DNA of 64,000 nucleotides from the IMG/VR virus record IMGVR_UViG_3300042545_001134, positions 246,692-310,691 of that record. One strand, written 5' to 3'. A program made the position numbers and the translations under genes. Below are positions 5,621-56,632 of this stretch, piece by piece. Positions within the stretch are counted from its first letter, which is position 1, and every line of letters starts with the position of its first letter. Under the pieces are notes generated by a model. The model was not told the origin of the DNA, made no database searches, and saw only the letters and a program-made list of their open reading frames with translations.

Positions 5621-5692
5621 AGTTTGTTATTTTTGTGTTTATTATAAATACTTTATCTTGTTGTATCTTTTCTTTTTTATTGTTTTTTATTT

Positions 5693-8600
5693 TTAGGAAC
5701 CAATCTGTAATGTTATGGAATCACTTCCCCAATCATACAAATAAGTACCGGGTGTTAATCCCATACTTGATATTGTTTTGTTCGCAAATGTTGCCGTACC
5801 ACTTAAAGGACTACCTGAAGTATAACCTATCGGTAAAATTATATCTTTACCTAGTGACCCATCCTGAATACCAAATGTTTGTCCTGAGTATGATGTTGGT
5901 GCTGTATATCCTGAACCGAAACTATTTGGGTAAACATTTAGATTATTTCCAAAAAATTTCCTAGCAAAAAATAGATTAGATTGACCAATTACCCAATAAC
6001 CCAACGTACCGTTAATACCTCCGGCTGTTTGTACTGAACCCTCAATTAATCCTGTTAGGTTAAGAGAACCAGAACCTGACATTATAACGTCAGAACCAAC
6101 CTCTAAAATTGTTACCACAAGACCTGATGTAGGTGTTGGAGTAGGTGTACTCGTAGGAGTTGGGGTACTTGTTGATGTTGGAGTAGGTGTATTTGTTTCC
6201 GTCGGAGTTGGTGTTGGTGTCTCTGTCGCCGTAGGTGTTGGTGTAGGTGTTGGTGTTGGTGCACAATCAACTAATATTGATTTTACAACAATATTTGATA
6301 GGTTGTTTCTATCTCTCGCAGCGACCCAATATGTTTTCGTGATGTTAGGTATTGGAAGACCGTAACCAACATAACCATTAGGATTCAAAACTGTTGACCA
6401 TTGCGTTTCATTCAATGCCTCCAATTCGGTATCATATAATCCATTACCTCTATCATAAAAACCTGAACCACCAGTGTAGTGATGTGTACTAACCGCACCG
6501 TCATCAACACAAGTACCTGAAATTTCAAAATCTAAAGGACTTTCTGTTGGAGTTGGTGTACTTGTTGCGGTCGGTGTCGGTGTAGGAGTTGGGGTTTCCG
6601 TAGGGGTTGGAGTTGGTGTAGGACAAATCCAAGTGGTTACTGAATCATTATAATTCTGTAAAACATCTGAAGATGAAATTGCACCATCCCATATTTCTAA
6701 TCTACCAAATTTAAGTGCGGAATATGTTCCATCATTTAAGTTTGTACTATCCGTTGCACCTATTGCATAATATAAACCATTACCACTTTGGTATGGTGCC
6801 TCTCTAACAACTGTTGATGAACCAGCACTTTGACCATTTACATATGCGGTTAAAGTTGTGTTGTTGTATACAAATCCAATATAATACCAATTATTAAGGG
6901 GTGTTGATATTGATGATGTTATTTCACTACCATATGGCCACACACTAAACTTCAATGTTCCATCAACTAACTCAATTTGTGAATCGTGCCAACCAATGTT
7001 TAAAACAGCACTACCTTGTTCACTCAATATTACACCATTATCTGTTAAATAAACCCAAAGAAATATAGATGTATCTGTAGAATCATAAAGTGTATTAATT
7101 GAGGTGTTGGTTAAAATATATTGACTGGTACCGTTCAACACTATTGACGAAGTACATCCATCATTTTGATATGATGGTGAACCAATTATACTTGCATTTG
7201 TGTTACCCAAAATGTCCGTAACCGTTGTTCCACTTCCAGAATATGATATTGAATCATTTATGTTTAAGTCAACAATTTTGTTATATGGTACCATTGTTGG
7301 TGTAGGAGTAGGTGTTGGTGTATTAGTTGGAGTTGGTGTACTTGTCTCCGTAGGTGTTGGTGTTGGGGTTTCCGTAGGGGTCGGAGTTGGGGTTATTGGA
7401 CAGACCCCACAATCAGTTCTATATGTTGCGATATTACTCCCATCCATATTAATGGTTTTATAATAACCATTATGGACAATTGTTCCCCAACCACTAAAAC
7501 CAAATCCATCTCCATTTGTTACAAAAACATTTGAATCACAGAACGTTGGCCCGTCACCCGTCACATAAAATCTTGGACATTCTCCCACAGGACAATTACA
7601 AGTTCCCTCAACAGAATCTTCTCCCAATGTTATTTCACCATAAAATACTGCTGGTGGTCTTAATACTGTATATTGAATATCGTTATTCGGTATTAATGTA
7701 TAAGATAAATCGGTATTCGGTATTATTGTATATGTTACATCGTTATTGGGTAAGGTTATATAAAGAACATCGTTGTCTGGAATAAAAGTTGTTGAAAAAT
7801 CACCTGAAGGAATTAATGTATACGTTAAATCGTTATTCGGTATTAATGTGTAAATGAAATCTCCATTTGGAATAATATTATAAATAAAATCATTTTCAGG
7901 TATATAAGGAGTTACTGTTGATGTTGGTGTTGGAGTTGGAGTTGAAGTTAAACACACAACATCAGTACAATCAGAAACCGTTGTTAATGTATCTAAATCA
8001 TAATCGAATGTTGGACCTAAATCAAGACCAACAATTTCGTAACACACACTATTCCCAATACTATAAGTTATTCCAGCTAACCCACTTGTTAAACTTCTAC
8101 CTATCTTATTGTGTGTTCGATTACAATCCCTTAGATAGTAATAATAGTAAACTACCGGAGTTTGTGTTGGTGTACTTGTAGGAGTTGGTGTTAATGTTGG
8201 AGTAATAGTTCCTGTTGGTGTACTTGTAGGAGTTGGTGTTATCTCCGAAAAAATTAATGCCAATGAAACATTATCGTTAAATTGTTCGGTACTATTAGTA
8301 TTAATCACCAATGGAGTGTACTCAAAGAATGTTTTATTCAAATCATCAAAATTTTCGGGTAATGTTTGAGTGTATTGACCTATAAGGTCACCGGCATATA
8401 TTGTAATAGAAATTGGTATTTCTAAAATACTTTCGTCATTTAATTTTAAAGTGTTAGTGGTTGTTAAGGTAATATCATCCGCAATTACCCTATCTATGGT
8501 TGCATCGTAATGACAAACAATTGAACCACTACCGATTACGCCACTAAATGTTAACACAACGGGTCCGACCGTTGTGGTCGATGTTGGCGTGGGAGTTGGA

Positions 8601-9997
8601 GTCGATGTTGGTGTTGGTGTTGGGAATAAAACCCCTATCACCTCATCGGGACAATCCGCAACACATTCAACGATATTGTAATATGGTTTAACATCCACTA
8701 AATAATGGTGCCTAACGTGAACAAAATCAAGAGGTTCTTCATAGTATCGTACTCTCTTAAAGTTAAAACATGAAATACCCATATTGTGAATTCCACCTGA
8801 ATATTCCGTTCCTGACCCCCAAGATTGTATAAAAGGTTGAACACCTCTTGTTGATGGGATAATTTCCTCCCAATCTTTTATTTTATAAACAGGTCTACCA
8901 TTTAGGTATATTTTTAAAACACCTAATCGTCTATTTCTCTCGTCGGCCCATTTTTTATTTAATAATTCAACGGTATTATGTACTGCAATTTGTGTTGATG
9001 TAACCGCAGTAACTCCGGTATTTGGAACATATTCATTTACGATATGTTCAGGAATTAAGTCATTCCACCCACCGTCATTCTCAATATTACAATCCGTCAA
9101 ATGACGATATCTGTCAAAAGTTATTGTGATTTCAAAATCTTCAGATGTTCCATCAATACAAAGTTGAGGGGTTTGTCCCGATGCGATGTAATAACTTTGA
9201 CCATAAACACCATCATCCGAACACGCTCCCGAATAGTGAACTGCTCTCCATTGAATTCTTCTATCATCGGTAAATGAAAATGAAAGATTATTATCGGCAT
9301 AGTCAGAAATACTACTATCTCCTCTTGTACCTAAATAATAAAATACTTTACCCACAGACCACGGTAATTCTTCCCTATTGAATACAAAATCCAAAGTCCA
9401 ACCCTTTTCAGTTCTTCTTTGAATAATTGGATTACAGTCATTTCCCGAGGCGGCACCGTGATTGGTTTGATACGCCCATGGTTTTGCGTTTGATGGTGAA
9501 TCTACTGGACAACAATGGTCTTCCTCCCATAATCTTGGAATACACGCAATTGGTGCACCGACAGTTAATCCTGTGACATTTAAAGAAAATGGATTGGAAA
9601 GTGGAGAATTGTAACTATATGTTCTAAAATAATGGGTAATACCACTAACATCCACGAATTCATATACGTCATTTTGTAAAATTGTGTCAGAATTACCTAA
9701 ACGATTAGTGAAGTCAGAATATGAAAGGGTCCATGTATATGCAGAATATGGGTATGTGGGGTCATTAATTCTATTATCGTACTCGACAATAGTAATCCTA
9801 TCTCGGGAACATAATGTACCCATAAGACCCGTAGTATTTATCTTCAAAGAGGAATAAACGATTGGTGTGGTAAGGTCAAGAACCTCGGTATTGTAATCTA
9901 CCTCAGTTTTACCCACCTCATAATCGTGAAATTCCGATGTATCGAGTTTCAAATCAAATTTGCTACCCCAAAATTTTAGTATATTCTGACTATTCAT
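5693..9997 (-). CDS. Large modular virion protein: LamG/ConA-like domain, (PT)n linkers, 11-aa repeats
   Basis: Several PTPT linkers; LamG-like NNWYYIGFVYN..LTAYVNG; tandem IPNND..Y(T/N) repeats. Confidence 0.7.
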   Translation of the reverse strand: MNSQNILKFWGSKFDLKLDTSEFHDYEVGKTEVDYNTEVLDLTTPIVYSSLKINTTGLMGTLCSRDRITIVEYDNRINDPTYPYSAYTWTLSYSDFTNRLGNSDTILQNDVYEFVDVSGITHYFRTYSYNSPLSNPFSLNVTGLTVGAPIACIPRLWEEDHCCPVDSPSNAKPWAYQTNHGAASGNDCNPIIQRRTEKGWTLDFVFNREELPWSVGKVFYYLGTRGDSSISDYADNNLSFSFTDDRRIQWRAVHYSGACSDDGVYGQSYYIASGQTPQLCIDGTSEDFEITITFDRYRHLTDCNIENDGGWNDLIPEHIVNEYVPNTGVTAVTSTQIAVHNTVELLNKKWADERNRRLGVLKIYLNGRPVYKIKDWEEIIPSTRGVQPFIQSWGSGTEYSGGIHNMGISCFNFKRVRYYEEPLDFVHVRHHYLVDVKPYYNIVECVADCPDEVIGVLFPTPTPTSTPTPTPTSTTTVGPVVLTFSGVIGSGSIVCHYDATIDRVIADDITLTTTNTLKLNDESILEIPISITIYAGDLIGQYTQTLPENFDDLNKTFFEYTPLVINTNSTEQFNDNVSLALIFSEITPTPTSTPTGTITPTLTPTPTSTPTQTPVVYYYYYLRDCNRTHNKIGRSLTSGLAGITYSIGNSVCYEIVGLDLGPTFDYDLDTLTTVSDCTDVVCLTSTPTPTPTSTVTPYIPENDFIYNIIPNGDFIYTLIPNNDLTYTLIPSGDFSTTFIPDNDVLYITLPNNDVTYTIIPNTDLSYTLIPNNDIQYTVLRPPAVFYGEITLGEDSVEGTCNCPVGECPRFYVTGDGPTFCDSNVFVTNGDGFGFSGWGTIVHNGYYKTINMDGSNIATYRTDCGVCPITPTPTPTETPTPTPTETSTPTPTNTPTPTPTPTMVPYNKIVDLNINDSISYSGSGTTVTDILGNTNASIIGSPSYQNDGCTSSIVLNGTSQYILTNTSINTLYDSTDTSIFLWVYLTDNGVILSEQGSAVLNIGWHDSQIELVDGTLKFSVWPYGSEITSSISTPLNNWYYIGFVYNNTTLTAYVNGQSAGSSTVVREAPYQSGNGLYYAIGATDSTNLNDGTYSALKFGRLEIWDGAISSSDVLQNYNDSVTTWICPTPTPTPTETPTPTPTPTATSTPTPTESPLDFEISGTCVDDGAVSTHHYTGGSGFYDRGNGLYDTELEALNETQWSTVLNPNGYVGYGLPIPNITKTYWVAARDRNNLSNIVVKSILVDCAPTPTPTPTPTATETPTPTPTETNTPTPTSTSTPTPTSTPTPTPTSGLVVTILEVGSDVIMSGSGSLNLTGLIEGSVQTAGGINGTLGYWVIGQSNLFFARKFFGNNLNVYPNSFGSGYTAPTSYSGQTFGIQDGSLGKDIILPIGYTSGSPLSGTATFANKTISSMGLTPGTYLYDWGSDSITLQIGS
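7665..7905 (-). repeat. About 7 tandem 33-nt (11-aa) coding repeats, IP(N/S/D)(N/G)Dx xY
   Basis: Visible in the translation: IPENDFIYNI-IPNGDFIYTL-IPNNDLTYTL-IPSGDFSTTF-IPDNDVLYIT-LPNNDVTYTI-IPNTDLSYTL-IPNNDIQY (10-11 aa period). Confidence 0.8.
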
Positions 9998-10052
9998 GTT
10001 ATTGATAAATATCTTTCCCTTCTTTTGATATTTATATAAGAAACAATATTAA

Positions 10053-10802
10053 ATGGATAAATACGTAAAAAATATTATTGAAGAGAAATTTACATCAAAA
10101 TCACAGCAAAGATTCTTCTTCGCAAAGGCCGGAGATAAGGATTTATCGAAGAAAGAAAGGAAGAAGTGGGGTAAGTTGGCTAAGGAATTTTCTGATGATA
10201 CCAATTATGATAAACTTCCTGATAGTGTTGAAACTGACGTTGAAGAAATTGTTGATGTAAATGGTAACATTGCTAGAAGTAAAGTTCCCCTAACAAGAGC
10301 ATCAAAAGGTTCAACACATAAAACTAGTGATGAGGTTGTTAAGGCATCGTCAGGACAGATGGGTAATCATGGTCTTGGTAGAAGTGCACTTACATCTTTA
10401 AGATATTGGGCGGAATCTGATATGAGCGACGCTTTGGGATATGATAAGACTCTTGGTGATGATGCAACATATGATGAAGCATTTGAACATTTTACAAAAA
10501 AATTAGGGTTAGGTGACGAAGAGTCCAAAGAAAGACTAGAAGCACTTGGATACATTCCGGGAGAAAAAGATTTAGTTAGACTTGTTGAGAACCCAAAAAA
10601 ATATATTTCCGATTACGTTGAAAGTGTTTTATCAAAAAAATCTTCTTCCGAAGATTTAATCACTAAAGACCAAACCGAAGATGTGGATAAAGAAATCGGT
10701 CCAATTATTAAAAAACAAATAAAATCTTTAAAAAATACATTAGTTAAGAACAATCTTTCAATTAAAGATGTACTTAAATTATTAAACAAGGACGATGAAT
10801 AA
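10053..10802 (+). CDS. Putative internal head protein
   Basis: N-terminal ..IIEE propeptide-like segment followed by basic KFTSKSQQRFFFA domain; late motif upstream. Confidence 0.55.
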   Translation: MDKYVKNIIEEKFTSKSQQRFFFAKAGDKDLSKKERKKWGKLAKEFSDDTNYDKLPDSVETDVEEIVDVNGNIARSKVPLTRASKGSTHKTSDEVVKASSGQMGNHGLGRSALTSLRYWAESDMSDALGYDKTLGDDATYDEAFEHFTKKLGLGDEESKERLEALGYIPGEKDLVRLVENPKKYISDYVESVLSKKSSSEDLITKDQTEDVDKEIGPIIKKQIKSLKNTLVKNNLSIKDVLKLLNKDDE

Positions 10803-14689: not shown

Positions 14690-14920
14690 ATGCATTATTT
14701 AGTAACAGTAGGTTACGAGTTGGAGCAACTCGACCGCAACGGAAACCCAAGACTTCAAAAAGTGAAATACATTGTTGAAGCAGAATCAGTAGAAGAGGCA
14801 ACAATTGTTGTTTCAAAATACAAAGCAGGAGATATGCGTTCAAGTGAAAGTTTATCAATCGCTAAAATGACAATTGAGTGTATCATCGACAAAAACAACA
14901 CACCCGAATACTACAAGTAA
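14690..14920 (+). CDS. DUF4494-like small protein
   Basis: Y.V.V.YE....NG......KY.VEAESVEEA resembles Bacteroidota DUF4494. Confidence 0.5.
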   Translation: MHYLVTVGYELEQLDRNGNPRLQKVKYIVEAESVEEATIVVSKYKAGDMRSSESLSIAKMTIECIIDKNNTPEYYK

Positions 14921-16823: not shown

Positions 16824-16862
16824 ACCTTTACTTATAATATTTTTTAAATTATATTTTCCTTT

Positions 16863-19560: not shown

Positions 19561-20259
19561 ATGCCACGCAAACGTACCCAAAAAATATATTTTGGGGAGG
19601 ACCAAGAACAAGCGGTGGTACGATATCTAGAATCAGAATCCGAATCAGAAAAGAATAAGATATTCAATGAATATTTAAGAGAACCTCTCATTATAATGGT
19701 TGAAAGTATCATTCGACGTTATAAATTATATAGAAAAAATTTAGAATTTGTGGACATCCACACTGATACAATGTCCTTTTTGATTACTAAAATCAATAAG
19801 TTCGACCATACAAAGAACCATAAGGCGTATTCGTACTTTGGTACCATTTGTAAGAACTATTTGATGGGGGCAATCCAAAAAGACACTAAGGAACAAAATA
19901 GAAGTGTTTCCTATGACGATATTTCATCATCATTAGAAGAGAGTCCTGAACACTCCTATGTCATCGATGAAACTCATGTTGATTATAGGGACGTTATCAT
20001 AAAGTTCAACATCCAAATGGAGGAATTTATGGAATCGGAAGAATTAACTGATAATGAACAAAAGTTAGGATATGCCCTTTTAGAAATCTTTGGCAATTTT
20101 GATAAAATCTTCCAAATAGGAGATGGAAACAAATTCAATAAGAACCTGATACTCTTATCTTTAAGGGAGATGACCTCCTTATCAACTAAGGAAATAAGGA
20201 TATCTCTTAGAAAATACAGAAAATTATACGAAGGTGTAATGTTAGGGTTCATAAATTAA
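19561..20259 (+). CDS. Phage sigma factor, T4 gp55-like (late transcription)
   Basis: Region-2-like KINKFDHTKNHKAYSYFGTICKNYL. Confidence 0.75.
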   Translation: MPRKRTQKIYFGEDQEQAVVRYLESESESEKNKIFNEYLREPLIIMVESIIRRYKLYRKNLEFVDIHTDTMSFLITKINKFDHTKNHKAYSYFGTICKNYLMGAIQKDTKEQNRSVSYDDISSSLEESPEHSYVIDETHVDYRDVIIKFNIQMEEFMESEELTDNEQKLGYALLEIFGNFDKIFQIGDGNKFNKNLILLSLREMTSLSTKEIRISLRKYRKLYEGVMLGFIN

Positions 20260-20280
20260 AAATAACCCTATTTATAGTGT

Positions 20281-20655
20281 ATGAGAGAGAGAAAAAATAT
20301 CATAGCACTCGATACAGACTCAGCGTTAGCGTTGATGCAGGAAATCTACAATGATATTGTGGAGCAAAAAAACACCGCATCAATGATAACGAAGAAAATG
20401 TTAACCTTCATGAAAGATGCGGAGGATATGAGTGTAATTGGTCCTGTTATTAAGGAACAACAAAAAATACTAAACGACTGTACCGAGAAGAAGATTTCGT
20501 TGGTTAAGTTACAAAGTGCATTATTAAAACAAACTCAAGGAACGGGCGCAAATTCTGGTGGTAAATTAAGTTTAACAGACGAAGATAGAACTCTTCTTGA
20601 GAAATTAATGAATGAACCCGACGACGAACCAAAACAAGGAACTTATAGAACGTAA
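20281..20655 (+). CDS. Hypothetical coiled-coil protein
   Basis: 124 aa ORF; late motif 5 nt upstream of ATG. Confidence 0.7.
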   Translation: MRERKNIIALDTDSALALMQEIYNDIVEQKNTASMITKKMLTFMKDAEDMSVIGPVIKEQQKILNDCTEKKISLVKLQSALLKQTQGTGANSGGKLSLTDEDRTLLEKLMNEPDDEPKQGTYRT

Positions 20656-24362: not shown

Positions 24363-24385
24363 TTTGATATTTATTAAATAAAAAG

Positions 24386-26047: not shown

Positions 26048-26060
26048 GGTATTTATAGTT

Positions 26061-28930: not shown

Positions 28931-28950
28931 TATGAACCTACAATAAATAA

Positions 28951-32760: not shown

Positions 32761-32840
32761 TTTAAAAAATTAGTTTATTATAAATATTGTGATTATGTAA
32801 AAAAGTACTTTTTACGGTATTATAATCTTAAATAAATTAG

Positions 32841-33524: not shown

Positions 33525-33558
33525 TTATCTTTTTCATAATAAATACCCCGTTCCTACA

Positions 33559-35003: not shown

Positions 35004-36815
35004 TTATTGTTCGTTTAGTATATCTTTTAATTTATTTTCTATTTCATAAATATTCTGTTGTGCCCTATTCATATCGAATAAATCGGTAAACTCTTCGCTC
35101 TCACCCAACATTCCTAATATTTTACGTTTTTTTGATGATTCCGCTAACGGTTCGGCTCCACCCGATGGAGGTGCCTCCGCCGCTGGCGCTCCACCACCCA
35201 TATCCATTCCACCTGGTTCTCCACCACCTTCCGGTGCATCACCACCCTGTTCTCTTTCTTCCTCAGGAACACCGTACTTAGTATCTACTTCATCAAATAC
35301 ACCTGAACGTTTAATAACATTCTGAGTGTTTGTTAATTCAAATCCCATTGCTCTTTCAAGACGTTGTTGTTGTAAATCAAGTATAACCTCACTATCACTC
35401 ATACCAAGAATATTTTTCTTAGCCCATGTGTGGGATACTGGTAATATACCAACTTGTGATGTGTCAGACGTTGCATCTTTATATAGAACAATTTTTTCTT
35501 TCCACTGCTCAATACGTAATAAGTCTGATTGTGCTGAAGGGTTAGTTAATGATAATGTGAAATTATCCAACTCATCCTCCAATCCAAGAAGATACAAATG
35601 CATAAGTGCAATTTTGTTTAATTCTTGAATCATAGACTTTTGAATTCTATTGATGGTTCTAGCGAAACGGATATCCATTAACGCTAAAGTTTTACCGTCA
35701 CCAACCACCTCTTCAAAACCTAAGAATGCCTTAGGTATACGAAGTGCCGCCAACATTTTCTTTTGGATGTATTCAATATCCGCAATCTCACCTAAGTTTT
35801 GTGCTCCCGGTAGAGTTTCAATTGGATTAGTTTGTGCCGCATCACGTACAGGAATGAAATAATCTTGGTCAACAGCCATTTGGTTATATCTCATATCCAC
35901 TTGACCATTTCTACTGTCAACTATTTGGTCCCTTTTAAATTTGTTCGCCACACGTTGCACATACGCCTCGATATCTTTATCATCCATGTTACCAACGAAT
36001 ACTTTGAATACACGTCTTTCGGGTGCTCTTGTTGTTCTATAAATTAACATCGCATCTTCGGCAAGAAGTAATTGTTTCCAAATTCTTCTAATCTTATCCA
36101 ACATTGATGTACCATATGGTAACTTTCTATCGTCACCCAGTAATCTAAAGTGGGCAATTTCCCATGCTTGGAATTCTAAATCTTTATTTTTCCATTGGAA
36201 CCTTAATTCTCTCGATGGCATCTTAGAATCATTTTGGTTAGGTGCTTTAGTTGAGCCACCCTCCATTCTTTCAATCTCAATATTCGGTAATTGTTGACAA
36301 CCAACAATACCTTTTTCGGGGTCAATTTTTAAATAAACAAAATCATCACCGTACTTACACACACCACGAGCCCACATTTGTAGGTTAGTGTTCAAATCTA
36401 AACGATTAATGAATAAGTCCTCAAGTATGGTTTTAATTCTTGAAGATTCTGAAAATATAGTAAGAATTTCACCTTTTTCTGATAATGTAGTAGATTCTTC
36501 TGCATAGATGTCTAATGCCGCCGAAATCTCAGGAGTAAACTCCATTGATTCATAATCATAATACGCCGACATTCTATTTGGTTCATAATAAACCGATTGG
36601 TTATATAATGATTGTTCAAGTTTTGTCCACTTGTCAGCAACGTATTGACTCTGTTGAGCCTGTAACATCGCCTTTTCGTATTCTTCCCTACTATTGGTTT
36701 TTAGTATTTCTTCTCTCGAGAAATTAAATGACGGTGAATCCTCGGGTTTTACTTGTCCCGGGAAACCAAACATCTTGGTTAACCTCTGAAATACAGTTAT
36801 GTTATTATCTGCCAT
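35004..36815 (-). CDS. gp20: Portal protein, T4 gp20-like
   Basis: PEISAALDIYAEE, EDAMLIYR..RAPERRVF.V.VGN, DYFIPVR, IETLPGAQNLGEIADIEY. Confidence 0.96.
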   Translation of the reverse strand: MADNNITVFQRLTKMFGFPGQVKPEDSPSFNFSREEILKTNSREEYEKAMLQAQQSQYVADKWTKLEQSLYNQSVYYEPNRMSAYYDYESMEFTPEISAALDIYAEESTTLSEKGEILTIFSESSRIKTILEDLFINRLDLNTNLQMWARGVCKYGDDFVYLKIDPEKGIVGCQQLPNIEIERMEGGSTKAPNQNDSKMPSRELRFQWKNKDLEFQAWEIAHFRLLGDDRKLPYGTSMLDKIRRIWKQLLLAEDAMLIYRTTRAPERRVFKVFVGNMDDKDIEAYVQRVANKFKRDQIVDSRNGQVDMRYNQMAVDQDYFIPVRDAAQTNPIETLPGAQNLGEIADIEYIQKKMLAALRIPKAFLGFEEVVGDGKTLALMDIRFARTINRIQKSMIQELNKIALMHLYLLGLEDELDNFTLSLTNPSAQSDLLRIEQWKEKIVLYKDATSDTSQVGILPVSHTWAKKNILGMSDSEVILDLQQQRLERAMGFELTNTQNVIKRSGVFDEVDTKYGVPEEEREQGGDAPEGGGEPGGMDMGGGAPAAEAPPSGGAEPLAESSKKRKILGMLGESEEFTDLFDMNRAQQNIYEIENKLKDILNEQ

Positions 36816-36872
36816 GTATATAAATAGTTTTCTTTATAATATAAATAATTTTAAGGGGATATTAAAGTCGTG

Positions 36873-38642: not shown

Positions 38643-38654
38643 ATATATAAATAC

Positions 38655-38682
38655 AAAAAAAGGAGGTTAAAAACCCCCTTTT
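38655..38682 (-). terminator. Putative intrinsic terminator
   Basis: AAAAGGGGGTT-loop-AACCTCCTTTTTTT on the minus strand after the 477-aa gene. Confidence 0.55.
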
Positions 38683-42084: not shown

Positions 42085-42159
42085 GTTTTTTAAATATTGA
42101 TAATGTGTTATTCTTAGTATCCTATAAATACATGCATATAGGTAAAAAAATTATGATTA

Positions 42160-42945: not shown

Positions 42946-43187
42946 TTTACTTTTTGATACTTGTATGTTTTAGAAATACTTGTATTGAAAAACTTACCCT
43001 GAGATTCCGCCATTCGGAATTTAGTGAAGATTTCCCATGGTACTTCATTATACTCATAAATAGCACCATTATTAAATTCCACCATCAGAGTCTTTTCTTC
43101 GGTGTTATATGTTGCACTTTTAAGATTAGACGATGTTATTAACACCTCAATCAGAAGACCATTAATTTTTTCAGATGTAATTCCCAT
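42942..43187 (-). CDS. KTSC domain protein
   Basis: SSNLKSATY....L.VEFNNG..YEY..VP......F..AESQGKFFN..I. Confidence 0.92.
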   Translation of the reverse strand: MGITSEKINGLLIEVLITSSNLKSATYNTEEKTLMVEFNNGAIYEYNEVPWEIFTKFRMAESQGKFFNTSISKTYKYQKVK

Positions 43188-43431
43188 AATGTTTTTTTAT
43201 CTGATAATATACACAATAAATACCAAATAAAAAACCCCGATTCCTCGGGGTTTAACTTAATTCAACAAAATAATATGTTAAAGTAATTTTTTTTCATATA
43301 TTCGTATCAAAATATATTCCGAATGAATAAATAAGACAATATGTCAGTTATATCTTTATACTAACTGAAAAAATGTCATCATTTTGTTTTTAGAATTATT
43401 TTTGTTATCTTTATTAAAAACACATTATATA

Positions 43432-45450: not shown

Positions 45451-45489
45451 ATATTTGGGTTTTTTTAAAAATCATATATATTTATATCA

Positions 45490-45586
45490 ACAAGGAAATC
45501 TTTGCCGAAATCCTTTCGTTTTTTAGTCCGTGGGGTTGAACCCACAAAAATGACCTTAAGCCCCGATTCCCGTCGGGGCTTTTTTT
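45490..45586 (+). ncRNA. Putative ~100-nt small RNA
   Basis: TATTTAT at 45479-45485, two hairpins, then terminator AAGCCCCGA-TTCCCG-TCGGGGCTT-U tract; no credible ORF. Confidence 0.45.
45558..45586 (+). terminator. Intrinsic terminator
   Basis: 9-bp GC-rich stem plus U7. Confidence 0.85.
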
Positions 45587-45615
45587 ATTCCGTAATTTTT
45601 CGTATATTTGTAACT

Positions 45616-45792
45616 ATGAGAAAATATACTTTGATTTTCGCAATTATCGCAACAGTTGCGATGACTGCATGTGGTAACGAGTCTACCACATCAACCGAAA
45701 CAACCGACTCAACTGCAACTGTTGCTGATACAACAGTTGTTGCTGATTCCGATGCAACACAGGAAACTGTGGATAGCACTGTGAAACAGTAA
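45616..45792 (+). CDS. Small lipoprotein (58 aa)
   Basis: MRKYTLIFAIIATVAMTA-C lipobox, T/D/S-rich tail; TAnnTTTG 5 nt upstream. Confidence 0.8.
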   Translation: MRKYTLIFAIIATVAMTACGNESTTSTETTDSTATVADTTVVADSDATQETVDSTVKQ

Positions 45793-47826: not shown

Positions 47827-48156
47827 ATGGATACAAATACTAACTCAATTGCGACCAAAAAATTATTAATAAAAGGAAAGTATGAAGGTTTTAAAGACTT
47901 TTATGATGTTAACAAAATTGTTATTTACAAAAACATTTTAAAACTTTTTACCAACTTCAAAAAACAAGATAAAGACCAATTAGTTCTTATCATTTCGGCA
48001 AAGATTAGTAATTTAGATTGGGAAACCGAATTGAAATTTCAAAGAAAAGAGTCCATCGTTTTAGTTCGTGATATCATGCCGTACTTCGAGCAAATCGAAG
48101 ACTATGAAACATGTGGTCAAATCTGTGACCTATACAAAAAAATACAATCAGTTTGA
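47827..48156 (+). CDS. Hypothetical protein
   Basis: 109 aa; C-terminal EQIEDYETC is UVR-like. Confidence 0.65.
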   Translation: MDTNTNSIATKKLLIKGKYEGFKDFYDVNKIVIYKNILKLFTNFKKQDKDQLVLIISAKISNLDWETELKFQRKESIVLVRDIMPYFEQIEDYETCGQICDLYKKIQSV

Positions 48157-50439: not shown

Positions 50440-52067
50440 AGATTAACCTTACTACCTATTAAGAAGAAAGATAAAATAGGAATTTCGGGGTTCGAACTTA
50501 TATTCGCCTTATAATTCATGTTTATTTTAAATCTTTTTGAGATTTGATAATCAAATCCACTACCCAAGAATCCACTAAAAAATCTATCGGTTATTGTTAC
50601 TTGTTCTTTTGTTGAGTAAACCAACGGTGTTGACATTACATATAATTCGGGTGACACCATTAATTTTTTACCGACCTTAAACGGTCTGGTGTAAAACGCA
50701 GTTACAGATGGTGAATAATAACCACTCTTATCTTCTGAAATGATTGATACCGCACCACTTACGTTAAAACCCGTAACACCCCATTTACCTGCGTTTAAAA
50801 TACCACTATATCCTAAGAAACCAAGTATATTTCCATAGGTGTATACACCAGTTAGACTAGCGTTATGTATGTACTTTATTGTGTTCTTTTTATTGTAATG
50901 TAACTTAGTATATTTTGTCGATATCGCAAATTGATTAAGATTTGCCCAAATCATAGCGGTCGCCCCGAAACTCGATAAACCTGTCATTGATGACCTGTTT
51001 GCACTCAAGTTAAGAATTGGAGTAAATGTTTTATTTAAATTTTGTGCGGTTGTTAAATCAGAAGAAACAATCAATGGATTTGAACTACCTGATTTACCAC
51101 CACCTGATTTACCACCACCTGATTTACCACCACCCGATTTACCACCACCTGAACTACCACCACCACTACCATTATCGTTGTGAGCGTCATTATTCATTGT
51201 TGTGGTTGCCCCAACCTCTTCATTACTTTGACTGTTTGAATTGTTACCCGACCCCGTTCCACCACCTGTTGTACTTCCGCCTGTGGTTCCACCCGAACTA
51301 CCCGTAGAACTACCATTACCACCGGTTCCACTTCCACCTGTTGTACTACCGCCAGTTGTTCCTGAACCACCCGTTCCACTTCCTCCTGTTGTACTACCGC
51401 CAGTTGTTCCTGAACCACCTACAGGTGGCTGAGACGAGCCACTTCCCCCTTGAGGTGGGTTACTTGAACCTGTGCTGTTTCCTCCCTGTGTTCCAGTTGA
51501 ACCTCCCTGAGAAGAATTAGTTCCTCCAGTCGACCCAGTAGTTCCTCCTGAACCTTGGGATTGACCTCCATTCTCGCCTCCCTGAGAAGACGAACCACTT
51601 CCGTTATTGTTATTACCTGACCCATTTGAATTTCCATTAGATTGTTTATTCCCATCTTTTTTATTATTCCCACCGGCATTAAGATTACCCCCACTCGATG
51701 ATGATTGAGCGGATGACATAATACTACCAACAACCGATTGTACGGTACTACTAATAATTTGGGATGTGATTTGATTTTGTGTTACTTGACCTTGTTGTTG
51801 TGAACATGGGTTTGTTTGACGATACTCGGAGTATGTTTGATTAACCCAACTTGAGAATACTCCACTGGCAACATCCGCAGCGGTAAAGTATTGACTTTTA
51901 TTTAAAAAAAATATTGTAGTACCACCTTGTAATGGTACGGTAAAAAGAGTTACTTCTTTTGTACATGGGTCGATAAATGTTTGCACCGACACCTGAGCCT
52001 TTATATTCTGACTAAACAGAACAAAAAAACTTATAAAAAATAATGTCTTTATTGTTTTCCAATACAT
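50436..52067 (-). CDS. Secreted protein with long Gly/Ser/Thr linker and C-terminal beta-barrel-like region
   Basis: Signal peptide, ~200 aa G/S/T/N low complexity including GGGKS x3-4, then alternating strands ending GSKVNL. Confidence 0.7.
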   Translation of the reverse strand: MYWKTIKTLFFISFFVLFSQNIKAQVSVQTFIDPCTKEVTLFTVPLQGGTTIFFLNKSQYFTAADVASGVFSSWVNQTYSEYRQTNPCSQQQGQVTQNQITSQIISSTVQSVVGSIMSSAQSSSSGGNLNAGGNNKKDGNKQSNGNSNGSGNNNNGSGSSSQGGENGGQSQGSGGTTGSTGGTNSSQGGSTGTQGGNSTGSSNPPQGGSGSSQPPVGGSGTTGGSTTGGSGTGGSGTTGGSTTGGSGTGGNGSSTGSSGGTTGGSTTGGGTGSGNNSNSQSNEEVGATTTMNNDAHNDNGSGGGSSGGGKSGGGKSGGGKSGGGKSGSSNPLIVSSDLTTAQNLNKTFTPILNLSANRSSMTGLSSFGATAMIWANLNQFAISTKYTKLHYNKKNTIKYIHNASLTGVYTYGNILGFLGYSGILNAGKWGVTGFNVSGAVSIISEDKSGYYSPSVTAFYTRPFKVGKKLMVSPELYVMSTPLVYSTKEQVTITDRFFSGFLGSGFDYQISKRFKINMNYKANISSNPEIPILSFFLIGSKVNL

Positions 52068-52080
52068 AATAATAAATACT

Positions 52081-52104
52081 AAAAAGGGGGTTATTAACCC
52101 CCCA
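52081..52104 (-). terminator. Putative intrinsic terminator
   Basis: GGGGGTT-AAT-AACCCCC plus U tract on the minus strand. Confidence 0.55.
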
Positions 52105-53808: not shown

Positions 53809-55716
53809 TTAGAGTTTTATAAATTGTTTTGTTAATTGGTTATTTTGATTGTTTAATACTAAATAGTAGTGACCCGTACTTGATGATGTCATGTCAATTT
53901 GTTTGTATCCCACTGTGGAACCTTGACCTGAAATTTCACCAATGTGTTTCACCAATCTACCTTGCATATCATAAATACTACCATTTAACTTAATATTCGG
54001 GTCGGGGAAAAGAACCTCAATCTCAAACCATCCTGTTACTGGATTTGGTCTAATAAGTGCGCTAATTTCTTTAAATTCACCGGGTAAAGTGGTTGGTGAC
54101 ATTTTATAGAAAAGTGTGGTCACTTGACTTGCTAAGTTTATTTCCAAATGGTCACCGTTATTATCAGATGCATCCATTAATTTTCTCACATAAATGTTTG
54201 TACTAACATCAACATTACCAATTGGACTAAATTTTATTTTAAATGGAGTGTGTGAACCAACCAATCCGTCTTTTTGTTGGTTGTTCATACCACCGAATCT
54301 GATGGTTCCCGCGGCCTCATCATGAGTTAAGTATTGTAACCAAGGACCACCATTAAAGTTGGAAACTATTTCATCAAATTTAACCTTTGTTTTATCGTAC
54401 TTCATCTCAAACTGTAAACCGTAGTTTTGGTCACCATTTGTGTTGATGTTAAATGGAACATACATTGGTTGTCCAAGTGATGATGTATTAGGAATTTCAA
54501 CATCTAATTTACCTTTATAAACCGCCTTAGCAACTAATACACCTGAACTGTTATAAACAGGAGATGAATAAGTTCTATCAACGTCACCTAATACAAAGTA
54601 CTTAATATCGATGTTAGTTAAGTTAGTGGTACCAATACTATCCACAACATAATTGTATGCGGTTGAGTGGTTTGTCCATTCTGTCCATTGGTTAGCGCCT
54701 AACACTAATGAATCAAATACATTTCTGTGGAATGCGTGAATCATTGTGGTTGTGTCAATCTTTTTAAGACCACTTATGTTTGCGTAAATCAAATAAGGGT
54801 CACCACCATCGATTTTACCGTTTTTGTTAACATCACCAATCAAATACGCCAAACCATGTTTCAAGTAGTTTTGTGATGGTGTTTGACTAACATCGGTAAC
54901 CGAATATTCATCATATGTTTTAACCGCATCAGATATAGTAACACCATAATCTCTAATAGTAGTCATACTATCTGCTGGGAATCTTACTGTTAATTTATAT
55001 TTTGTATTTTTATCTACGTTGTTAAGAGAGTAAAGACCTGCAGTATCCACTTGTTGTGAAGATACAAATTCACCTGTGTTAAATTTAGTACAAATGATTG
55101 TAGGTCTCATTCCAACACCTACCATAGTAGGTGGTAACCATACTTTACCACTAATAACCAAGTTACCCAAAAGTTCAAGATGCATATCCTGTACGTTCAA
55201 GGTCGCAATGTTATCACCAATTGTGGTACCATCAAATTTGAACATACGAGCCCAGTTAATTTCAAGACTATCCGCGTTGAAGTTTGATGTAACATCATTT
55301 ATGATAAATTTGTTATGTATTAAGAAAGTATCCGCAGTAATCTGAGAACCACTTGATAATACTAAGTAATTTCTGGCAACAGTGTAGTTAGTATCGGTTG
55401 CATATGTGTACGAACTTGTACTTGAGTTGTAACCCGAATACTTGTAGTCATTAAAGAACTTAATAGACAACGAAGGGGTCATACTACTAACGGTAGCGTC
55501 AACAGTTGTTGATACGTGAGTAAAAAGTTGTTTTCTATATTGAAAATCAACTTGGAAGGTTCTTATGTCCACAGATGACGATGCGTCATATTTGAACACC
55601 ACATCTAATGTGTCTCCTCTTTTAATGGTTTTATAGGCAACTGGGTTACCTATACCTTGTGCAAATGCCGACGATGATGTAATTAATACAACAAGGGCTA
55701 AAATTAGTTTTTTCAT
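53809..55716 (-). CDS. T9SS-tagged scaffold protein: cohesin-like, Ig-like, dockerin-like, cohesin-like, T9SS type A CTD
   Basis: Signal peptide; GDTLDV...FQVDFQY; GDVNKNGKIDGGD; VPF.I.....YGLQFEMKYD..KVKF; IRPNP...IYDMQGRLV...GHYYLVL...TKQFIKL. Confidence 0.8.
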   Translation of the reverse strand: MKKLILALVVLITSSSAFAQGIGNPVAYKTIKRGDTLDVVFKYDASSSVDIRTFQVDFQYRKQLFTHVSTTVDATVSSMTPSLSIKFFNDYKYSGYNSSTSSYTYATDTNYTVARNYLVLSSGSQITADTFLIHNKFIINDVTSNFNADSLEINWARMFKFDGTTIGDNIATLNVQDMHLELLGNLVISGKVWLPPTMVGVGMRPTIICTKFNTGEFVSSQQVDTAGLYSLNNVDKNTKYKLTVRFPADSMTTIRDYGVTISDAVKTYDEYSVTDVSQTPSQNYLKHGLAYLIGDVNKNGKIDGGDPYLIYANISGLKKIDTTTMIHAFHRNVFDSLVLGANQWTEWTNHSTAYNYVVDSIGTTNLTNIDIKYFVLGDVDRTYSSPVYNSSGVLVAKAVYKGKLDVEIPNTSSLGQPMYVPFNINTNGDQNYGLQFEMKYDKTKVKFDEIVSNFNGGPWLQYLTHDEAAGTIRFGGMNNQQKDGLVGSHTPFKIKFSPIGNVDVSTNIYVRKLMDASDNNGDHLEINLASQVTTLFYKMSPTTLPGEFKEISALIRPNPVTGWFEIEVLFPDPNIKLNGSIYDMQGRLVKHIGEISGQGSTVGYKQIDMTSSSTGHYYLVLNNQNNQLTKQFIKL

Positions 55717-56213
55717 AGTAGTTTATCGAGTAAGTTTATTGTTGTTTTCTTTATTGCAGAACTTGCGGATTCTTGATTGAATTTACCTCCCTCATCAATA
55801 ATGATTGTTGAAGTTGATATTTCAGTCGATTTACCTTCCGCAAATTCAGTTTTAATTTTTTTATCTCCTTTATAGAGAACACCCTTCATTCTAATGACGG
55901 TGGTACTTTTATCTTGGTGAAATACAGCAATTCCTGATTTAGTATTGACGATATCAAAGAATATTAATTCAACCTGTATTGAGTATTCGGCCTTTTCTTT
56001 TACCCCAATCAAGACCAAACTATCTTGTTCATTTATTATTTCTTGAACAATGTTTTTTACTCCAAACGCCAAATTTTTGTTACCAACAAGAGTACCAACA
56101 CGGATGTTGTTAATCACGGGTTCAACAAAAATAGTCGGTCCTGTCTGAGCAGTTACGCTCAAAAAGGGACATAGGAATAGCACAGAAAAAATTATACTTT
56201 TGATAAGTCTCAT
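55713..56213 (-). CDS. Secreted protein (possible CsgG/TolB-N-like alpha-beta fold)
   Basis: Signal peptide; GVKNIVQE and FNQES.S.AIKK echo the 255-aa CsgG-like protein. Confidence 0.55.
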   Translation of the reverse strand: MRLIKSIIFSVLFLCPFLSVTAQTGPTIFVEPVINNIRVGTLVGNKNLAFGVKNIVQEIINEQDSLVLIGVKEKAEYSIQVELIFFDIVNTKSGIAVFHQDKSTTVIRMKGVLYKGDKKIKTEFAEGKSTEISTSTIIIDEGGKFNQESASSAIKKTTINLLDKLL

Positions 56214-56237
56214 GGTTAAACAGTGGAATAAATTAGA

Positions 56238-56498
56238 TTATTCAGAGATTTCGTCTTCCGATTTTTTATTCTTGTTGTTAATCCACTTATCGACAGATGC
56301 GATACCGAATGAACCTAACGTGATTACTAAAAATCCGTCAAAGATAAATTCGTTAATTAGTAATTCTTTACCCATCCAACCTGTAATAAGGTCAACGAAT
56401 AGAGAGATTACCATCATGAGAAACGCGATGAATCCCACTACTGATTTCTCGTTAATTGTGTTGTTATCGTTAAATAACTGGCTGAAAAATTTTTTCAT
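56238..56498 (-). CDS. Small two-TM membrane protein
   Basis: Two hydrophobic helices; first gene of the operon. Confidence 0.7.
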   Translation of the reverse strand: MKKFFSQLFNDNNTINEKSVVGFIAFLMMVISLFVDLITGWMGKELLINEFIFDGFLVITLGSFGIASVDKWINNKNKKSEDEISE

Positions 56499-56632
56499 AG
56501 TTGTAGTTTGTGTTTGTTTTTATGTTTGGTTATCAATAAATATCCCGGCAAAGTGTTAAGGAAAAAAAATTCGAGAAAATCAAGTCTAAAAAAATTTTAT
56601 ATCTTTTTTGATACTTTTCTTTGTTTTTTGCA

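What the first reader, a model, noticed from the sequence alone, without database searches (positions are those of the whole stretch)
5643..56542. Late promoter TA(T/C)TTAT with frequent leaderless spacing
Seen: TATTTAT on the coding strand upstream of many structural or late genes. Plus strand: 10029, 20269, 24368, 26050, 45479. Minus strand: 5644, 10005, 32780, 33539, 36820, 38647, 42124, 43216, 52072, 56536. The spacing to ATG is exactly 4 nt for 26061, portal, terminase and 52067, and 5 nt for 20281. The motif is the reverse complement of the T4 late box (TATAAATA) core but follows gene orientation. Inference: it is the target of the gp55-like sigma (19561-20259), and several late mRNAs are leaderless.
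Basis: partly seen in the sequence, partly recalled or inferred. Interest (0 to 1): 0.6.

Follow-up and report, generated by a model that had tools for sequence, protein, structure and literature searches.

The report
Late promoter box of Bacteroidota phages
A seven-base box, TATTTAT, sits just upstream of the structural and lysis genes of this 311-kb phage and its relatives; it is most likely their late promoter, read by a phage-encoded sigma factor, and it often lies so close to the start codon that the message can have almost no leader.

Summary
All 15 listed TATTTAT copies exist and the stated spacings (4 or 5 nt) are exact. The box is not over-represented in the window overall (35 copies, 35.4 expected). 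Its placement is far from random. In upstream regions there are 16 sense and 3 antisense copies in the window (shuffles 2.5), and 68 versus 21 in the whole 310,691-bp phage genome (shuffles 13.4). Inside genes it is depleted about threefold. Across four sets of relatives' loci, 14 of the 15 listed sites are intact in 80-100% of aligned relatives (52072: 5 of 10), while chance copies decay. The same box precedes terminase, portal, sheath, tube, baseplate, tail-fibre and lysis genes in cultured Flavobacterium phage immuto, and terminase and portal-like genes in a Microcystis phage. There is no -35/-33 element. A second, mutually exclusive class (TAnnTTTG with TTG upstream, the Bacteroidota sigma-A type) serves DNA polymerase, helicase and other early genes. 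ORF 19561-20259 is a divergent sigma-70-family protein. T4 gp55 is its best PDB sequence match and is among its best fold matches, but it carries an extra C-terminal domain. It is linked to the box only by co-occurrence and synteny. Leaderless starts follow from geometry; no start sites were mapped. The TACTTAT variant is not supported.

The parts
19561..20259 (+). Divergent sigma-70-family gene ('sigmaL', 232 aa), the candidate late sigma
   Evidence: Pfam Sigma70_r2 E = 0.003, below cut-off; 21 of 53 family members hit Sigma70_r2. Best PDB sequence hit is T4 gp55, 7d7c_F, E = 0.016. The family profile hits SigA at E = 0.0023. AF2 model pLDDT 91. VIA-align gives Z = 10.7 to gp55, and all top-50 matches are sigma factors. 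More than 1,250 clusters at 50% identity.
20269..20275 (+). TATTTAT box immediately after the sigma gene, 5 nt before the ATG of 20281-20655 (head of a 20281-24362 gene run)
   Evidence: Intact in 74/75 relatives. The same sigma-then-box synteny occurs in immuto, L088 and L089.
5644..5650 (-). Box 23 nt before the ATG of 3512-5620 (702 aa, unknown function)
   Evidence: intact in 9/9 relatives.
10005..10011 (-). Box 7 nt before the ATG of 5693-9997 (1434 aa, Laminin_G_3 domain, fibre-like)
   Evidence: intact in 52/52 relatives.
10029..10035 (+). Divergent partner box, 17 nt before the ATG of 10053-10802
   Evidence: intact in 50/52 relatives.
24368..24374 (+). Box 11 nt before the ATG of 24386-25762
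   Evidence: intact in 63/64 relatives.
26050..26056 (+). Box 4 nt before the ATG of 26061-26786
   Evidence: Intact in 15/18 relatives. Orthologues have spacers of 4 (5 cases), 5 (2) and 2 (1).
28943..28949 (-). Box 46 nt before the TTG of 28444-28896; status uncertain
   Evidence: No diverged relative aligned here, so it was not tested.
32780..32786 (-). Box 19 nt before the ATG of 31573-32760; the major capsid gene 29809-31539 follows in the same run
   Evidence: capsid homology to immuto gp23-like. Intact in 40/40 relatives; 23/23 distinct orthologous upstream regions carry it.
33539..33545 (-). Box 14 nt before the ATG of the prohead protease gene 32841-33524
   Evidence: Pfam Peptidase_S77, E = 9.5e-22. 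Intact in 40/40 relatives. Contigs from RNA libraries cover the gene up to 33504, and none cover 33546-33943 in three runs (weak evidence).
35046..35052 (-).
   Evidence: Intact in 61/61 relatives; 34/34 distinct orthologous upstream regions, spacer 41-44.
36820..36826 (-). Box 4 nt before the portal ATG (35004-36815)
   Evidence: PHROG portal, E = 1.6e-65. Intact in 76/76 relatives. Spacer is 4 in 31 of 39 distinct relatives, otherwise 5 or 7.
38647..38653 (-). Box 4 nt before the large terminase ATG (36873-38642)
   Evidence: PHROG terminase hits. Intact in 77/77 relatives. Spacer is 4 in 36 of 43 distinct relatives, 6 in six.
38658..38682 (-). Intrinsic-terminator hairpin and T-run that abut the terminase box
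   Evidence: The stem covaries among relatives (GGGGG/CCCCC, GGTGG/CCACC, GGAGG/CCTCC) while the box stays fixed.
42124..42130 (-). Box 39 nt before the ATG of 41107-42084
   Evidence: Intact in 41/41 relatives; 24/24 distinct orthologous upstream regions.
43056..43062 (-).
   Evidence: Intact in 36/36 relatives at 74% flank identity. Whether it acts as a promoter or is kept by its codons is not resolved.
43216..43222 (-). Box 28 nt before the ATG of 42942-43187, directly after the terminator hairpin 43232-43253
   Evidence: Intact in 28/35 relatives; 26/28 distinct upstream regions.
45479..45485 (+). Box followed about 75 nt later by the terminator 45558-45581: a candidate late small RNA rather than a protein gene
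   Evidence: Intact in 23/26 and 15/15 relatives.
52072..52078 (-). Box 4 nt before the ATG of 50436-52067, directly after the hairpin 52086-52103 and a T-run
   Evidence: Present in 4 of 5 distinct relative variants, spacer 4-7.
56536..56542 (-). Box 37 nt before the ATG of 56238-56498(-), a homologue of immuto gp192, which heads that phage's lysis cassette
   Evidence: the homology shows that the + ORF 56212-56559 is a shadow of this gene. Intact in 4/4 relatives. immuto gp192 is itself preceded by a terminator and TATTTAT.

Best explanation
TATTTAT, usually R-TATTTAT-A/T, on the coding strand is the single -10-like element of the late promoter class of this jumbo phage of a Bacteroidota host, and of a large clade of relatives. 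Host core RNA polymerase carrying the phage sigma encoded at 19561-20259 ('sigmaL') most likely recognises it without any -35/-33 element. In logic this resembles T4 gp55 at TATAAATA. Early and replication genes use the host sigma-A promoter type instead (TTG ... TAnnTTTG). At about one late promoter in six (12 of 66) the box ends 3-5 nt before the ATG, so transcription must begin at or within a few bases of the start codon. That gives leaderless or nearly leaderless late mRNAs. Other late promoters give leaders of roughly 8-20 nt. Shown: the box's placement, strand bias, depletion in genes, conservation, lack of an upstream element, and association with structural and lysis genes; the sigma fold of the ORF.
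For: Position and strand. Specificity of the exact 7-mer. No upstream element. Depletion in genes. The L box and the host-type box are mutually exclusive (67 and 45 genes, none with both). Footprinting: listed sites are kept in about 80-100% of relatives at 72-92% flank identity, while chance copies are lost. Genes lacking the box lack it in 0 to 3 of 15-36 orthologous upstream regions. The box is fixed next to a covarying terminator. Function: box-led genes with an assignable role are terminase, portal, prohead protease, the capsid operon, sheath, tube, baseplate, head completion, fibres and endolysins. Host-box genes are DNA polymerase, DnaB, a nucleotidase, an RpoD-like sigma, a ClpB-like ATPase and a glycosyltransferase. 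My tally is 17/19 late-type against 0/6, Fisher p = 1.6e-4. The cultured Flavobacterium phage immuto has 41 forward-intergenic boxes against 13 reverse, before its structural and lysis genes; it has a sigmaL homologue (gp118) followed at once by the box, and no RpoD-like sigma. Microcystis phage Mel-JY01, from a different host phylum, has a partial sigmaL homologue and the same box before terminase and portal-like genes. This argues for a phage-borne reader rather than a host sigma. Sigma identity. No phage RNA polymerase was found. Leaderless inference: the spacer histogram peaks at 4 nt (8 genes; Poisson p = 1.2e-5, 7e-4 after correction), and the spacer and the ATG are conserved in relatives. 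Host-type boxes in the same genome pile up at exactly the spacing that the published Flavobacterium geometry (box at -12 to -5, PMC9723704) predicts for a start at the A of ATG.
Against: No transcription start or timing data exist. The only RNA evidence is assembled metatranscriptome contigs, which cannot show ends. One contig from a relative runs to 36824, 9 nt upstream of the portal ATG. The sigmaL-box link is correlative. The genome has a second, canonical sigma (regions 2 and 4). SigmaL has an extra C-terminal domain whose resemblance to sigma region 4 is inconclusive (best Z = 6.0), yet no -35-like element exists. The sigmaL gene has no promoter of its own and sits in a run headed by a late box at 10029, with no clear terminator between, so how it is first switched on is unexplained. 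With T4's geometry (box from -13, PMC2988020) a 4-nt spacer would place the start inside the ATG, so this box must sit about 2 nt closer to the start than T4's. A DnaG-like primase gene also carries the box. Sequence-level similarity to gp55 is marginal (E = 0.016 single sequence, 0.11 profile).
Confidence: 0.7

Rival explanations
1. The box is a genuine late promoter, but it is read by something other than sigmaL: the host sigma-A (perhaps re-targeted by a phage factor, as T4 does at middle promoters), or the phage's canonical RpoD-like sigma (G000:C1:176350-177159).
For: TATTTATA shares 6 of 8 positions with TAnnTTTG (the two free n positions counted as matches), giving 4 of its 6 specified bases. 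The RpoD-like sigma has clear regions 2 and 4 and sits behind a host-type early promoter, as expected for a sigma made early to switch on later genes. The link between sigmaL and the box is only correlative.
Against: immuto has the box but no detectable RpoD-like sigma (best tblastn E = 0.83). The box is shared with a cyanophage whose host sigma differs. No variant bridging the two box types is enriched, no -33 element is present, and the two classes never co-occur at one gene.
Confidence: 0.2
2. The box acts at the RNA level, as a processing site, a translation enhancer for Shine-Dalgarno-less ribosomes or a binding site for a phage protein, on transcripts that start further upstream.
For: It lies on the sense strand near start codons. 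U/A-rich leaders favour initiation in Bacteroidota (PMC6847099, from its abstract). One contig from an RNA library spans the portal box.
Against: Spacing ranges from 4 to more than 60 nt. The box often directly follows a terminator hairpin and T-run. It is depleted on both strands of coding DNA, which an RNA signal would not require. It also heads a short unit that ends in a terminator and has no ORF. In the cyanophage it coexists with ordinary GGAG-type ribosome sites.
Confidence: 0.06
3. It is a by-product of AT-rich intergenic composition or of terminator T-runs, with no function of its own.
For: The total count in the window equals the shuffle expectation. Intergenic DNA here is very AT-rich.
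Against: Composition-matched shuffles of the upstream regions give 2.5 against 16 observed in the window and 13.4 against 68 in the genome. Neighbouring 7-mers are not enriched. Conservation is near-complete in diverged relatives, while chance copies decay. Only 5 of 70 sites follow a terminator-like fold.
Confidence: 0.01

Closest known systems
Bacteriophage T4 late transcription (gp55 sigma, gp33 co-activator, gp45 sliding clamp; late box TATAAATA)
   Same: A single AT-rich -10-like box with no -35 element drives structural genes on either strand (PMC2988020, PMC7892883). The phage encodes a highly diverged sigma whose region-2 domain matches gp55. Terminase, portal, capsid and prohead protease are distant T4-type proteins.
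   Different: The box is TATTTAT(A/T), not TATAAATA; TATAAATA in the sense orientation is not enriched (8 copies, 4.4 expected). The box must lie about 2 nt closer to the start than T4's -13 to -6. The sigma is 232 aa with an extra C-terminal domain that gp55 lacks. No T4-type clamp was detected by Pfam, and gp33 was not sought. The host is Bacteroidota, whose mRNAs lack Shine-Dalgarno sites.
Bacteroidota primary sigma-A promoters (-33 TTG, -7 TAnnTTTG)
   Same: They begin with TA and are T-rich, they sit very close to the start site (-12 to -5 in F. psychrophilum, PMC9723704), and they occur in the same genome, where they serve early genes.
   Different: The late box has A, not T, at position 6, has no G at position 8 and has no -33 element. 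It serves a disjoint gene set. It is shared with a cyanophage.
Leaderless mRNAs of Bacteroidota hosts
   Same: The promoter box sits at a fixed short distance from an ATG. Such mRNAs exist in the hosts: 5.5% of mRNAs in F. psychrophilum (PMC9723704), and about 3.7% of 5' UTRs under 10 nt in B. thetaiotaomicron (PMC7366714).
   Different: They are far more frequent here. 12 of 66 late promoters have a spacer of 5 nt or less, and 18 of 66 have 9 nt or less. They include essential genes such as terminase and portal. None has been verified experimentally.
Other phage-encoded sigma factors, such as Bacillus phage SPO1 gp28 and gp33/34 (from my own knowledge, not tested here)
   Same: A phage sigma redirects host core polymerase to a phage-specific promoter class in a temporal cascade.
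   Different: Those promoters are two-part (-35 and -10). No sequence relationship to them was examined.

Membership tests
T4-type late system (gp55/gp33/gp45) | Promoter is one -10-like box with no conserved -35 | tested here: met
   Information content over 70 aligned sites is confined to the box, plus R at -1 and A/T at +8. No enriched upstream word remains once stop-codon words are discounted.
T4-type late system (gp55/gp33/gp45) | Box sequence TATAAATA on the non-template strand | tested here: not met
   TATAAATA in the sense orientation: 8 copies against 4.4 expected. TATTTATA in the sense orientation: 44.
T4-type late system (gp55/gp33/gp45) | gp55 homologue: a small sigma with region 2 only and a C-terminal clamp-binding tail | tested here: inconclusive
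   gp55 is the best PDB sequence hit at E = 0.016, scores 0.11 with the family profile, and gives Z = 10.7 over 117 residues. No PHROG family hit. The protein carries about 90 extra C-terminal residues.
T4-type late system (gp55/gp33/gp45) | T4-type sliding clamp (gp45) as activator | tested here: not met
   PF02916 and PF09116 have no match in the 310-kb genome at E <= 1. A diverged clamp could be missed, and the record is estimated 93% complete.
T4-type late system (gp55/gp33/gp45) | gp33-like co-activator on the beta flap | not tested
   No search was made.
T4-type late system (gp55/gp33/gp45) | Targets are virion and lysis genes | tested here: met
   Fisher p = 1.6e-4.
Sigma-70 family | Region 2 (core binding, -10 recognition) | tested here: met
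   Sigma70_r2 is hit by 21 of 53 family members, best E = 3e-5. The profile hits SigA region 2 at E = 0.0023. All top-50 structural matches are sigma factors, Z 8.6-10.9.
Sigma-70 family | Region 4 helix-turn-helix (-35 recognition, flap binding) | tested here: inconclusive
   No Pfam region-4 hit in any of 53 members. The C-terminal domain model (pLDDT 86) finds several region-4 structures (sigma-H Z 5.7, SigA region 4 Z 5.1, sigma-E region 4 Z 4.7), but none stands above unrelated rows.
Sigma-70 family | Binds host core RNA polymerase | not testable with these tools
Bacteroidota sigma-A promoter | -7 box TAnnTTTG with -33 TTG | tested here: not met
   The late box differs at positions 6 and 8 and lacks a -33 element. 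The genome's other class meets this test: 45 genes, 31 of them with TTG upstream.
Leaderless mRNA | Primary 5' end at the A of the AUG | not testable with these tools
   Only Logan contigs of three RNA runs were available, and contigs cannot show ends.
Leaderless mRNA | Promoter box at a fixed minimal distance from an ATG start codon | tested here: met
   Eight genes have a spacer of exactly 4 nt, and all start with ATG. Spacer and ATG are conserved in relatives.

The most novel reading that the evidence does not exclude
A previously unannotated phage sigma family (more than 1,250 clusters at 50% identity, mostly labelled 'hypothetical') and its cognate one-element promoter TATTTAT form a late-transcription system. 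It is shared by distant T4-like phages of two host phyla, Bacteroidota and Cyanobacteria. In the Bacteroidota phages the promoter has moved up against the start codon, so that core genes such as terminase and portal are translated from leaderless mRNAs, an adaptation to hosts that do not use Shine-Dalgarno sites.
Probability: 0.4. Interest if true: 0.65.

Novelty: new variant of a known kind. Interest (0 to 1): 0.55.

Why it matters
The clade is abundant in freshwater and estuarine metagenomes. The searches returned more than 7,800 close sigma homologues and contigs up to 333 kb. Most of its genes have no annotation. A precise, conserved late-promoter box labels late transcription units directly from sequence. 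Here it flags dozens of unknown proteins as probable virion or lysis components, corrects several gene calls, and reveals a candidate late small RNA. It also gives a testable sigma-promoter pair in a cultured system (Flavobacterium phage immuto), in a phylum whose transcription and Shine-Dalgarno-independent translation are poorly understood. If the leaderless starts are confirmed, the phage would be a natural model for leaderless translation in Bacteroidota. I found no description of this box or sigma in the searchable literature. That library is incomplete, so prior description cannot be excluded.

Tried and rejected
- Megablast of 8 kb against GenBank phages gave no match.
- PHROGs found nothing for the sigma ORF or for most box-led proteins, so function had to come from homology to immuto and from Pfam.
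- A sigma-70 consensus scan showed no enrichment: 69 against 80.9 expected, and 75 against 74.0. E. coli-type promoters are therefore not in play.
- A search for a -35-like word upstream of the box found only stop-codon-related words.
- Pyrimidine at -1 in the short-spacer class is 11/11, but 61% of all genes have one, so it is a weak argument.
- The TACTTAT variant was rejected.
- Pfam searches for a phage RNA polymerase (PF00623, PF00940) and a T4 clamp (PF02916, PF09116) found nothing. The PF00940 control rang nowhere, so that result is uninformative.
- ESM Atlas look-alikes for the sigma C-terminal domain all scored below 0.8. The fold search of that domain alone was inconclusive.
- Reads were laid on 5,951 bases, within the operators' 6,000-letter limit. 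Only contigs were available. They show the region occurs in three RNA libraries but give no starts.
- No alternative genetic code was used.
- The costly word-index protein search was used once, only after family scans left the sigma ORF open.
Full report
**What the window is.** The window is the last 64 kb (246692-310691) of a 310,691-bp IMG/VR virus record that CheckV rates 93% complete. GC content is about 34%.
- Genes are preceded by A/T-rich leaders without Shine-Dalgarno sites.
- One protein carries a type-IX-secretion sorting domain.
- A large promoter class in the genome matches the Bacteroidota sigma-A consensus.
- The closest cultured relative is Flavobacterium phage immuto, with terminase 28% identical.

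Together these point to a Bacteroidota host. Terminase, portal, prohead protease and capsid are distant T4-type proteins. The clade is very common in metagenomes. More than 7,800 close homologues of one protein were found, and relatives occur on contigs up to 333 kb.

**Checking the observation.** All 15 listed TATTTAT copies exist on the stated strands, and the stated spacings are exact. The raw count is not enriched: 35 copies against 35.4 in shuffles. Enrichment shows only when position and orientation are considered.
- I used a simple ORF-based gene model of the whole genome: 352 genes, 8.7% intergenic.
- 90 of the 146 copies are intergenic, where 12.7 are expected by area.
- In the 80 nt or less upstream of genes there are 68 sense and 21 antisense copies. 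Dinucleotide-preserving shuffles of those same regions give 13.4.
- Within the window the figures are 16 sense, 3 antisense and 2.5 from shuffles, with a maximum of 8 in 200 shuffles.
- TATTTAT is the most over-represented 7-mer upstream of genes, z = 16.
- None of its 21 one-mismatch neighbours behaves likewise.
- Inside genes the word is about threefold under-represented on both strands: 32 against 85.8, and 20 against 67. This is expected if stray copies are harmful.
- Aligning 70 sites shows information only in the 7-mer, a purine just before it and A/T just after it. There is no -35/-33 element.

**Comparative evidence.** I fetched four sets of relatives' loci from IMG/VR. They lie around terminase (80 loci, 86-100% identity), around the sigma ORF (80 loci, 79-100%), and around 50436-52067 and 3512-5620 (21 and 18 loci).
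- Where the flanks are only 72-92% identical, the listed boxes are almost always intact:

| Site | Intact in relatives |
|---|---|
| 10005 | 52/52 |
| 10029 | 50/52 |
| 20269 | 74/75 |
| 24368 | 63/64 |
| 26050 | 15/18 |
| 32780 | 40/40 |
| 33539 | 40/40 |
| 36820 | 76/76 |
| 38647 | 77/77 |
| 42124 | 41/41 |
| 43216 | 28/35 |
| 45479 | 23/26 and 15/15 |
| 5644 | 9/9 |
| 56536 | 4/4 |

- Copies that look like chance are mostly lost: 9835, 10057, 11776, 17406, 36841, 37606, 43327, 45447, 46678, 2895 and 7880.
- By gene, every distinct orthologous upstream region of a box-led gene carries the box (8/8, 23/23, 30/30, 39/39, 43/43, 24/24). Genes without it lack it in 0 to 3 of 15-36 regions.
- Upstream of terminase the box is invariant, while the adjacent terminator stem changes by compensatory pairs.

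**Deeper relatives.**
- *Flavobacterium phage immuto.* In this 160-kb cultured phage nearly all genes lie on one strand. It has 41 forward-intergenic boxes against 13 reverse. They precede terminase, portal, sheath, tube, baseplate hub, tape measure, tail fibres, structural proteins and the lysis cassette.
- *Distant metagenomic lineages.* Two lineages whose sigma is only 33% identical keep the box directly after the sigma gene. A third has AACTATTTA[A/C] there instead.
- *Microcystis phage Mel-JY01.* This phage of a cyanobacterium has a partial homologue of the sigma and the same box before terminase, a portal-like gene and others. There the leaders are 20-37 nt and contain GGAG-like sites.

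**What kinds of genes carry the box.** Functions came from Pfam, PHROGs and homology to annotated immuto genes.
- Box-led genes with an assignable role are terminase, portal, prohead protease, the capsid operon, sheath, tube, baseplate assembly with wedge, head completion, several structural and fibre proteins (including a 4,057-aa one) and two endolysins.
- The exceptions are a DnaG-like primase and a small NadR-like fragment.
- A second promoter class, TAnnTTTG with TTG about 19 nt upstream and often extended to TTGGAATATTC, precedes 45 genes and never the same ones.
- Assignable genes in that class are DNA polymerase B, DnaB helicase, a deoxyribonucleotidase, an RpoD-like sigma, a ClpB-like ATPase and a glycosyltransferase.
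- My tally is 17 of 19 late-type genes for the box against 0 of 6 for the host-type class, Fisher p = 1.6e-4.

'Late' is therefore well supported by gene function. No expression timing was measured.

**The sigma.** ORF 19561-20259 has no PHROG match and only a sub-threshold Pfam Sigma70_r2 match.
- Its best sequence match among all PDB chains is T4 gp55: E = 0.016, residues 17-140 against 18-145.
- A profile of 53 diverse homologues hits cyanobacterial SigA region 2 at E = 0.0023 and gp55 at 0.11.
- 21 of the 53 members hit Sigma70_r2, and none hits region 4.
- The AlphaFold model is confident, pLDDT 91.
- Foldseek's top hits are all sigma factors.
- VIA-align ranks gp55 second (Z = 10.7, rmsd 4.6 Å, 117 residues) among 50 matches that are all sigma factors.
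- Residues 140-232 form an extra helical domain that gp55 lacks. Folded alone (pLDDT 86), it finds several sigma region-4 structures at Z 4.4-5.7, but they do not stand above unrelated rows.

It is therefore a diverged sigma-70-family protein. 'gp55-like' holds for the N-terminal domain only.

**Other candidate readers of the box.**
- The genome also encodes a canonical sigma of 269 aa with regions 2 and 4, placed behind a host-type promoter.
- immuto has the box and a sigmaL homologue but no detectable copy of that second sigma.
- No phage RNA polymerase or T4-type clamp was found.
- A complex prediction with host beta' could not be run.

**Leaderless starts.** Among 66 box-led genes, the distance from the box to the start codon has a sharp peak at 4 nt. 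Eight genes share it, Poisson p = 1.2e-5. It is essentially the smallest value seen: the single 3-nt case has a second ATG 9 nt from the box.
- A broad hump follows at 11-20 nt.
- The 4-nt spacer and the ATG are conserved for terminase (36 of 43 distinct relatives) and portal (31 of 39).
- A promoter element cannot overlap the start site, so transcripts from these promoters can have at most about 4 nt of leader.
- The host-type class provides an internal calibration. In F. psychrophilum the TAnnTTTG box lies at -12 to -5 (PMC9723704). In this genome five host-type boxes lie exactly 4 nt from an ATG, the spacing which that geometry predicts for a start at the A.
- For the late box the geometry must be about 1 nt tighter than that, and about 2 nt tighter than T4's box, which starts at -13 (PMC2988020).
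- Host leaderless mRNAs are rare: 5.5% in F. psychrophilum (PMC9723704), and about 3.7% of 5' UTRs under 10 nt in B. thetaiotaomicron (PMC7366714). Here 12 of 66 late promoters have spacers of 5 nt or less.

**Direct RNA evidence.** It is weak. Three metatranscriptome runs hold parts of 32750-38700, but only as contigs.
- Coverage of the protease gene stops at 33504, and nothing covers 33546-33943 in any run. This fits a start near the 33539 box.
- One contig from a relative reaches 36824, beyond the portal ATG. That could be read-through or DNA.

**Open points.**
- The sigmaL gene has no promoter of its own. It lies in a gene run headed by the late box at 10029, with no clear terminator between, so its first expression is unexplained.
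- The role of its C-terminal domain is unknown.

**Verdict.** The promoter interpretation is strongly supported. The sigma assignment and the leaderless claim are reasonable inferences, at about 0.65 each. The system works like T4 late transcription but fails two of that family's defining tests (box sequence, clamp). I therefore class it as a new variant of a known kind. I found no prior description in the searchable literature.

Noticed in passing
window 45486-45592 (+): Candidate late small RNA. The TATTTAT box at 45479 is followed by a conserved unit of about 100 nt with two hairpins and a strong terminator (45558-45581 plus a T-run). Five pairs show compensatory changes among 8 relatives. 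No Rfam family reaches its gathering score.
   Followed up: partly
window 45502-45792 and 45603-45792 (+): The TTG-start ORF 45502-45792 looks like a mis-call. The likely gene is 45616-45792 (58 aa) with a lipoprotein-type signal ending in a Cys. It sits behind its own host-type box, TATATTTG at 45603-45610, with a 5-nt spacer.
   Followed up: partly
G000:C1 about 1-100 kb; in the window at 2856-2871(-), 29736-29743(-), 43397-43404(+), 63569-63576(+): The early promoter class is of the Bacteroidota sigma-A type (TTG, often TTGGAATATTC, then about 19 nt, then TAT(A/C)TTTG). It precedes 45 genes. Five have exactly 4 nt to the ATG, so they are predicted leaderless by the published host geometry. 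The palindrome GAATATTC (9 intergenic copies) is part of the extended -33 region.
   Followed up: partly
G000:C1:176350-177159 (-), outside the window: A second phage sigma factor of 269 aa with clear Sigma70 regions 2 and 4, related to RpoD-like sigmas of other jumbo phages. It lies behind a host-type TACATTTG box. Its target promoters are unknown.
   Followed up: partly
window 56837-63941 (+): An array of 21 tRNA genes covering 18 amino acids, interspersed with small ORFs.
   Followed up: no
window 56212-56559 (+) and 56238-56498 (-): The + strand ORF is a shadow. Its translation matches the opposite strand of immuto gp192, so the real gene is 56238-56498(-), a homologue of the gene that heads immuto's endolysin/holin cassette.
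   Followed up: partly
window 53809-55716 (-), 48148-50439 (-), 5693-9997 (-): Large late-run proteins carry a T9SS C-terminal sorting domain (Por_Secre_tail), a weak C-type lectin match and a Laminin_G_3 domain. They are probably host-surface-binding or fibre proteins, and the sorting domain is a host clue.
   Followed up: no
L171 (Microcystis phage Mel-JY01, PP395634.1 804-32255): A cyanophage with a partial homologue of the sigma uses the same TATTTAT box before terminase, a portal-like gene and others. Its leaders are 20-37 nt and contain GGAG-like sites, and none has a short spacer.
   Followed up: partly
L090:10783-10808, 14824-14846, about 1150-1185: In one distant lineage (sigma 34% identical) the syntenic box reads AACTATTTA[A/C] rather than TATTTAT. 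This may be a case of sigma and promoter changing together.
   Followed up: no
G000:C1:184633-185580 (-), outside the window: A DnaG-like primase gene carries a late box only 3 nt from its first ATG (9 nt from a second ATG). It is an exception to the pairing of the late box with structural genes.
   Followed up: no
window 16829-16835 (+): The TACTTAT upstream of 16863-17540 is kept in 35 of 55 relatives and reads TATTTAT in 4. It may be a weak or decaying late promoter inside the run that leads to the sigma gene.
   Followed up: partly
window 43432-45450 (+): A ClpB/ClpA-like double AAA+ ATPase (PHROG 'ATP-dependent protease', E = 3e-241) encoded by the phage behind a host-type promoter.
   Followed up: no
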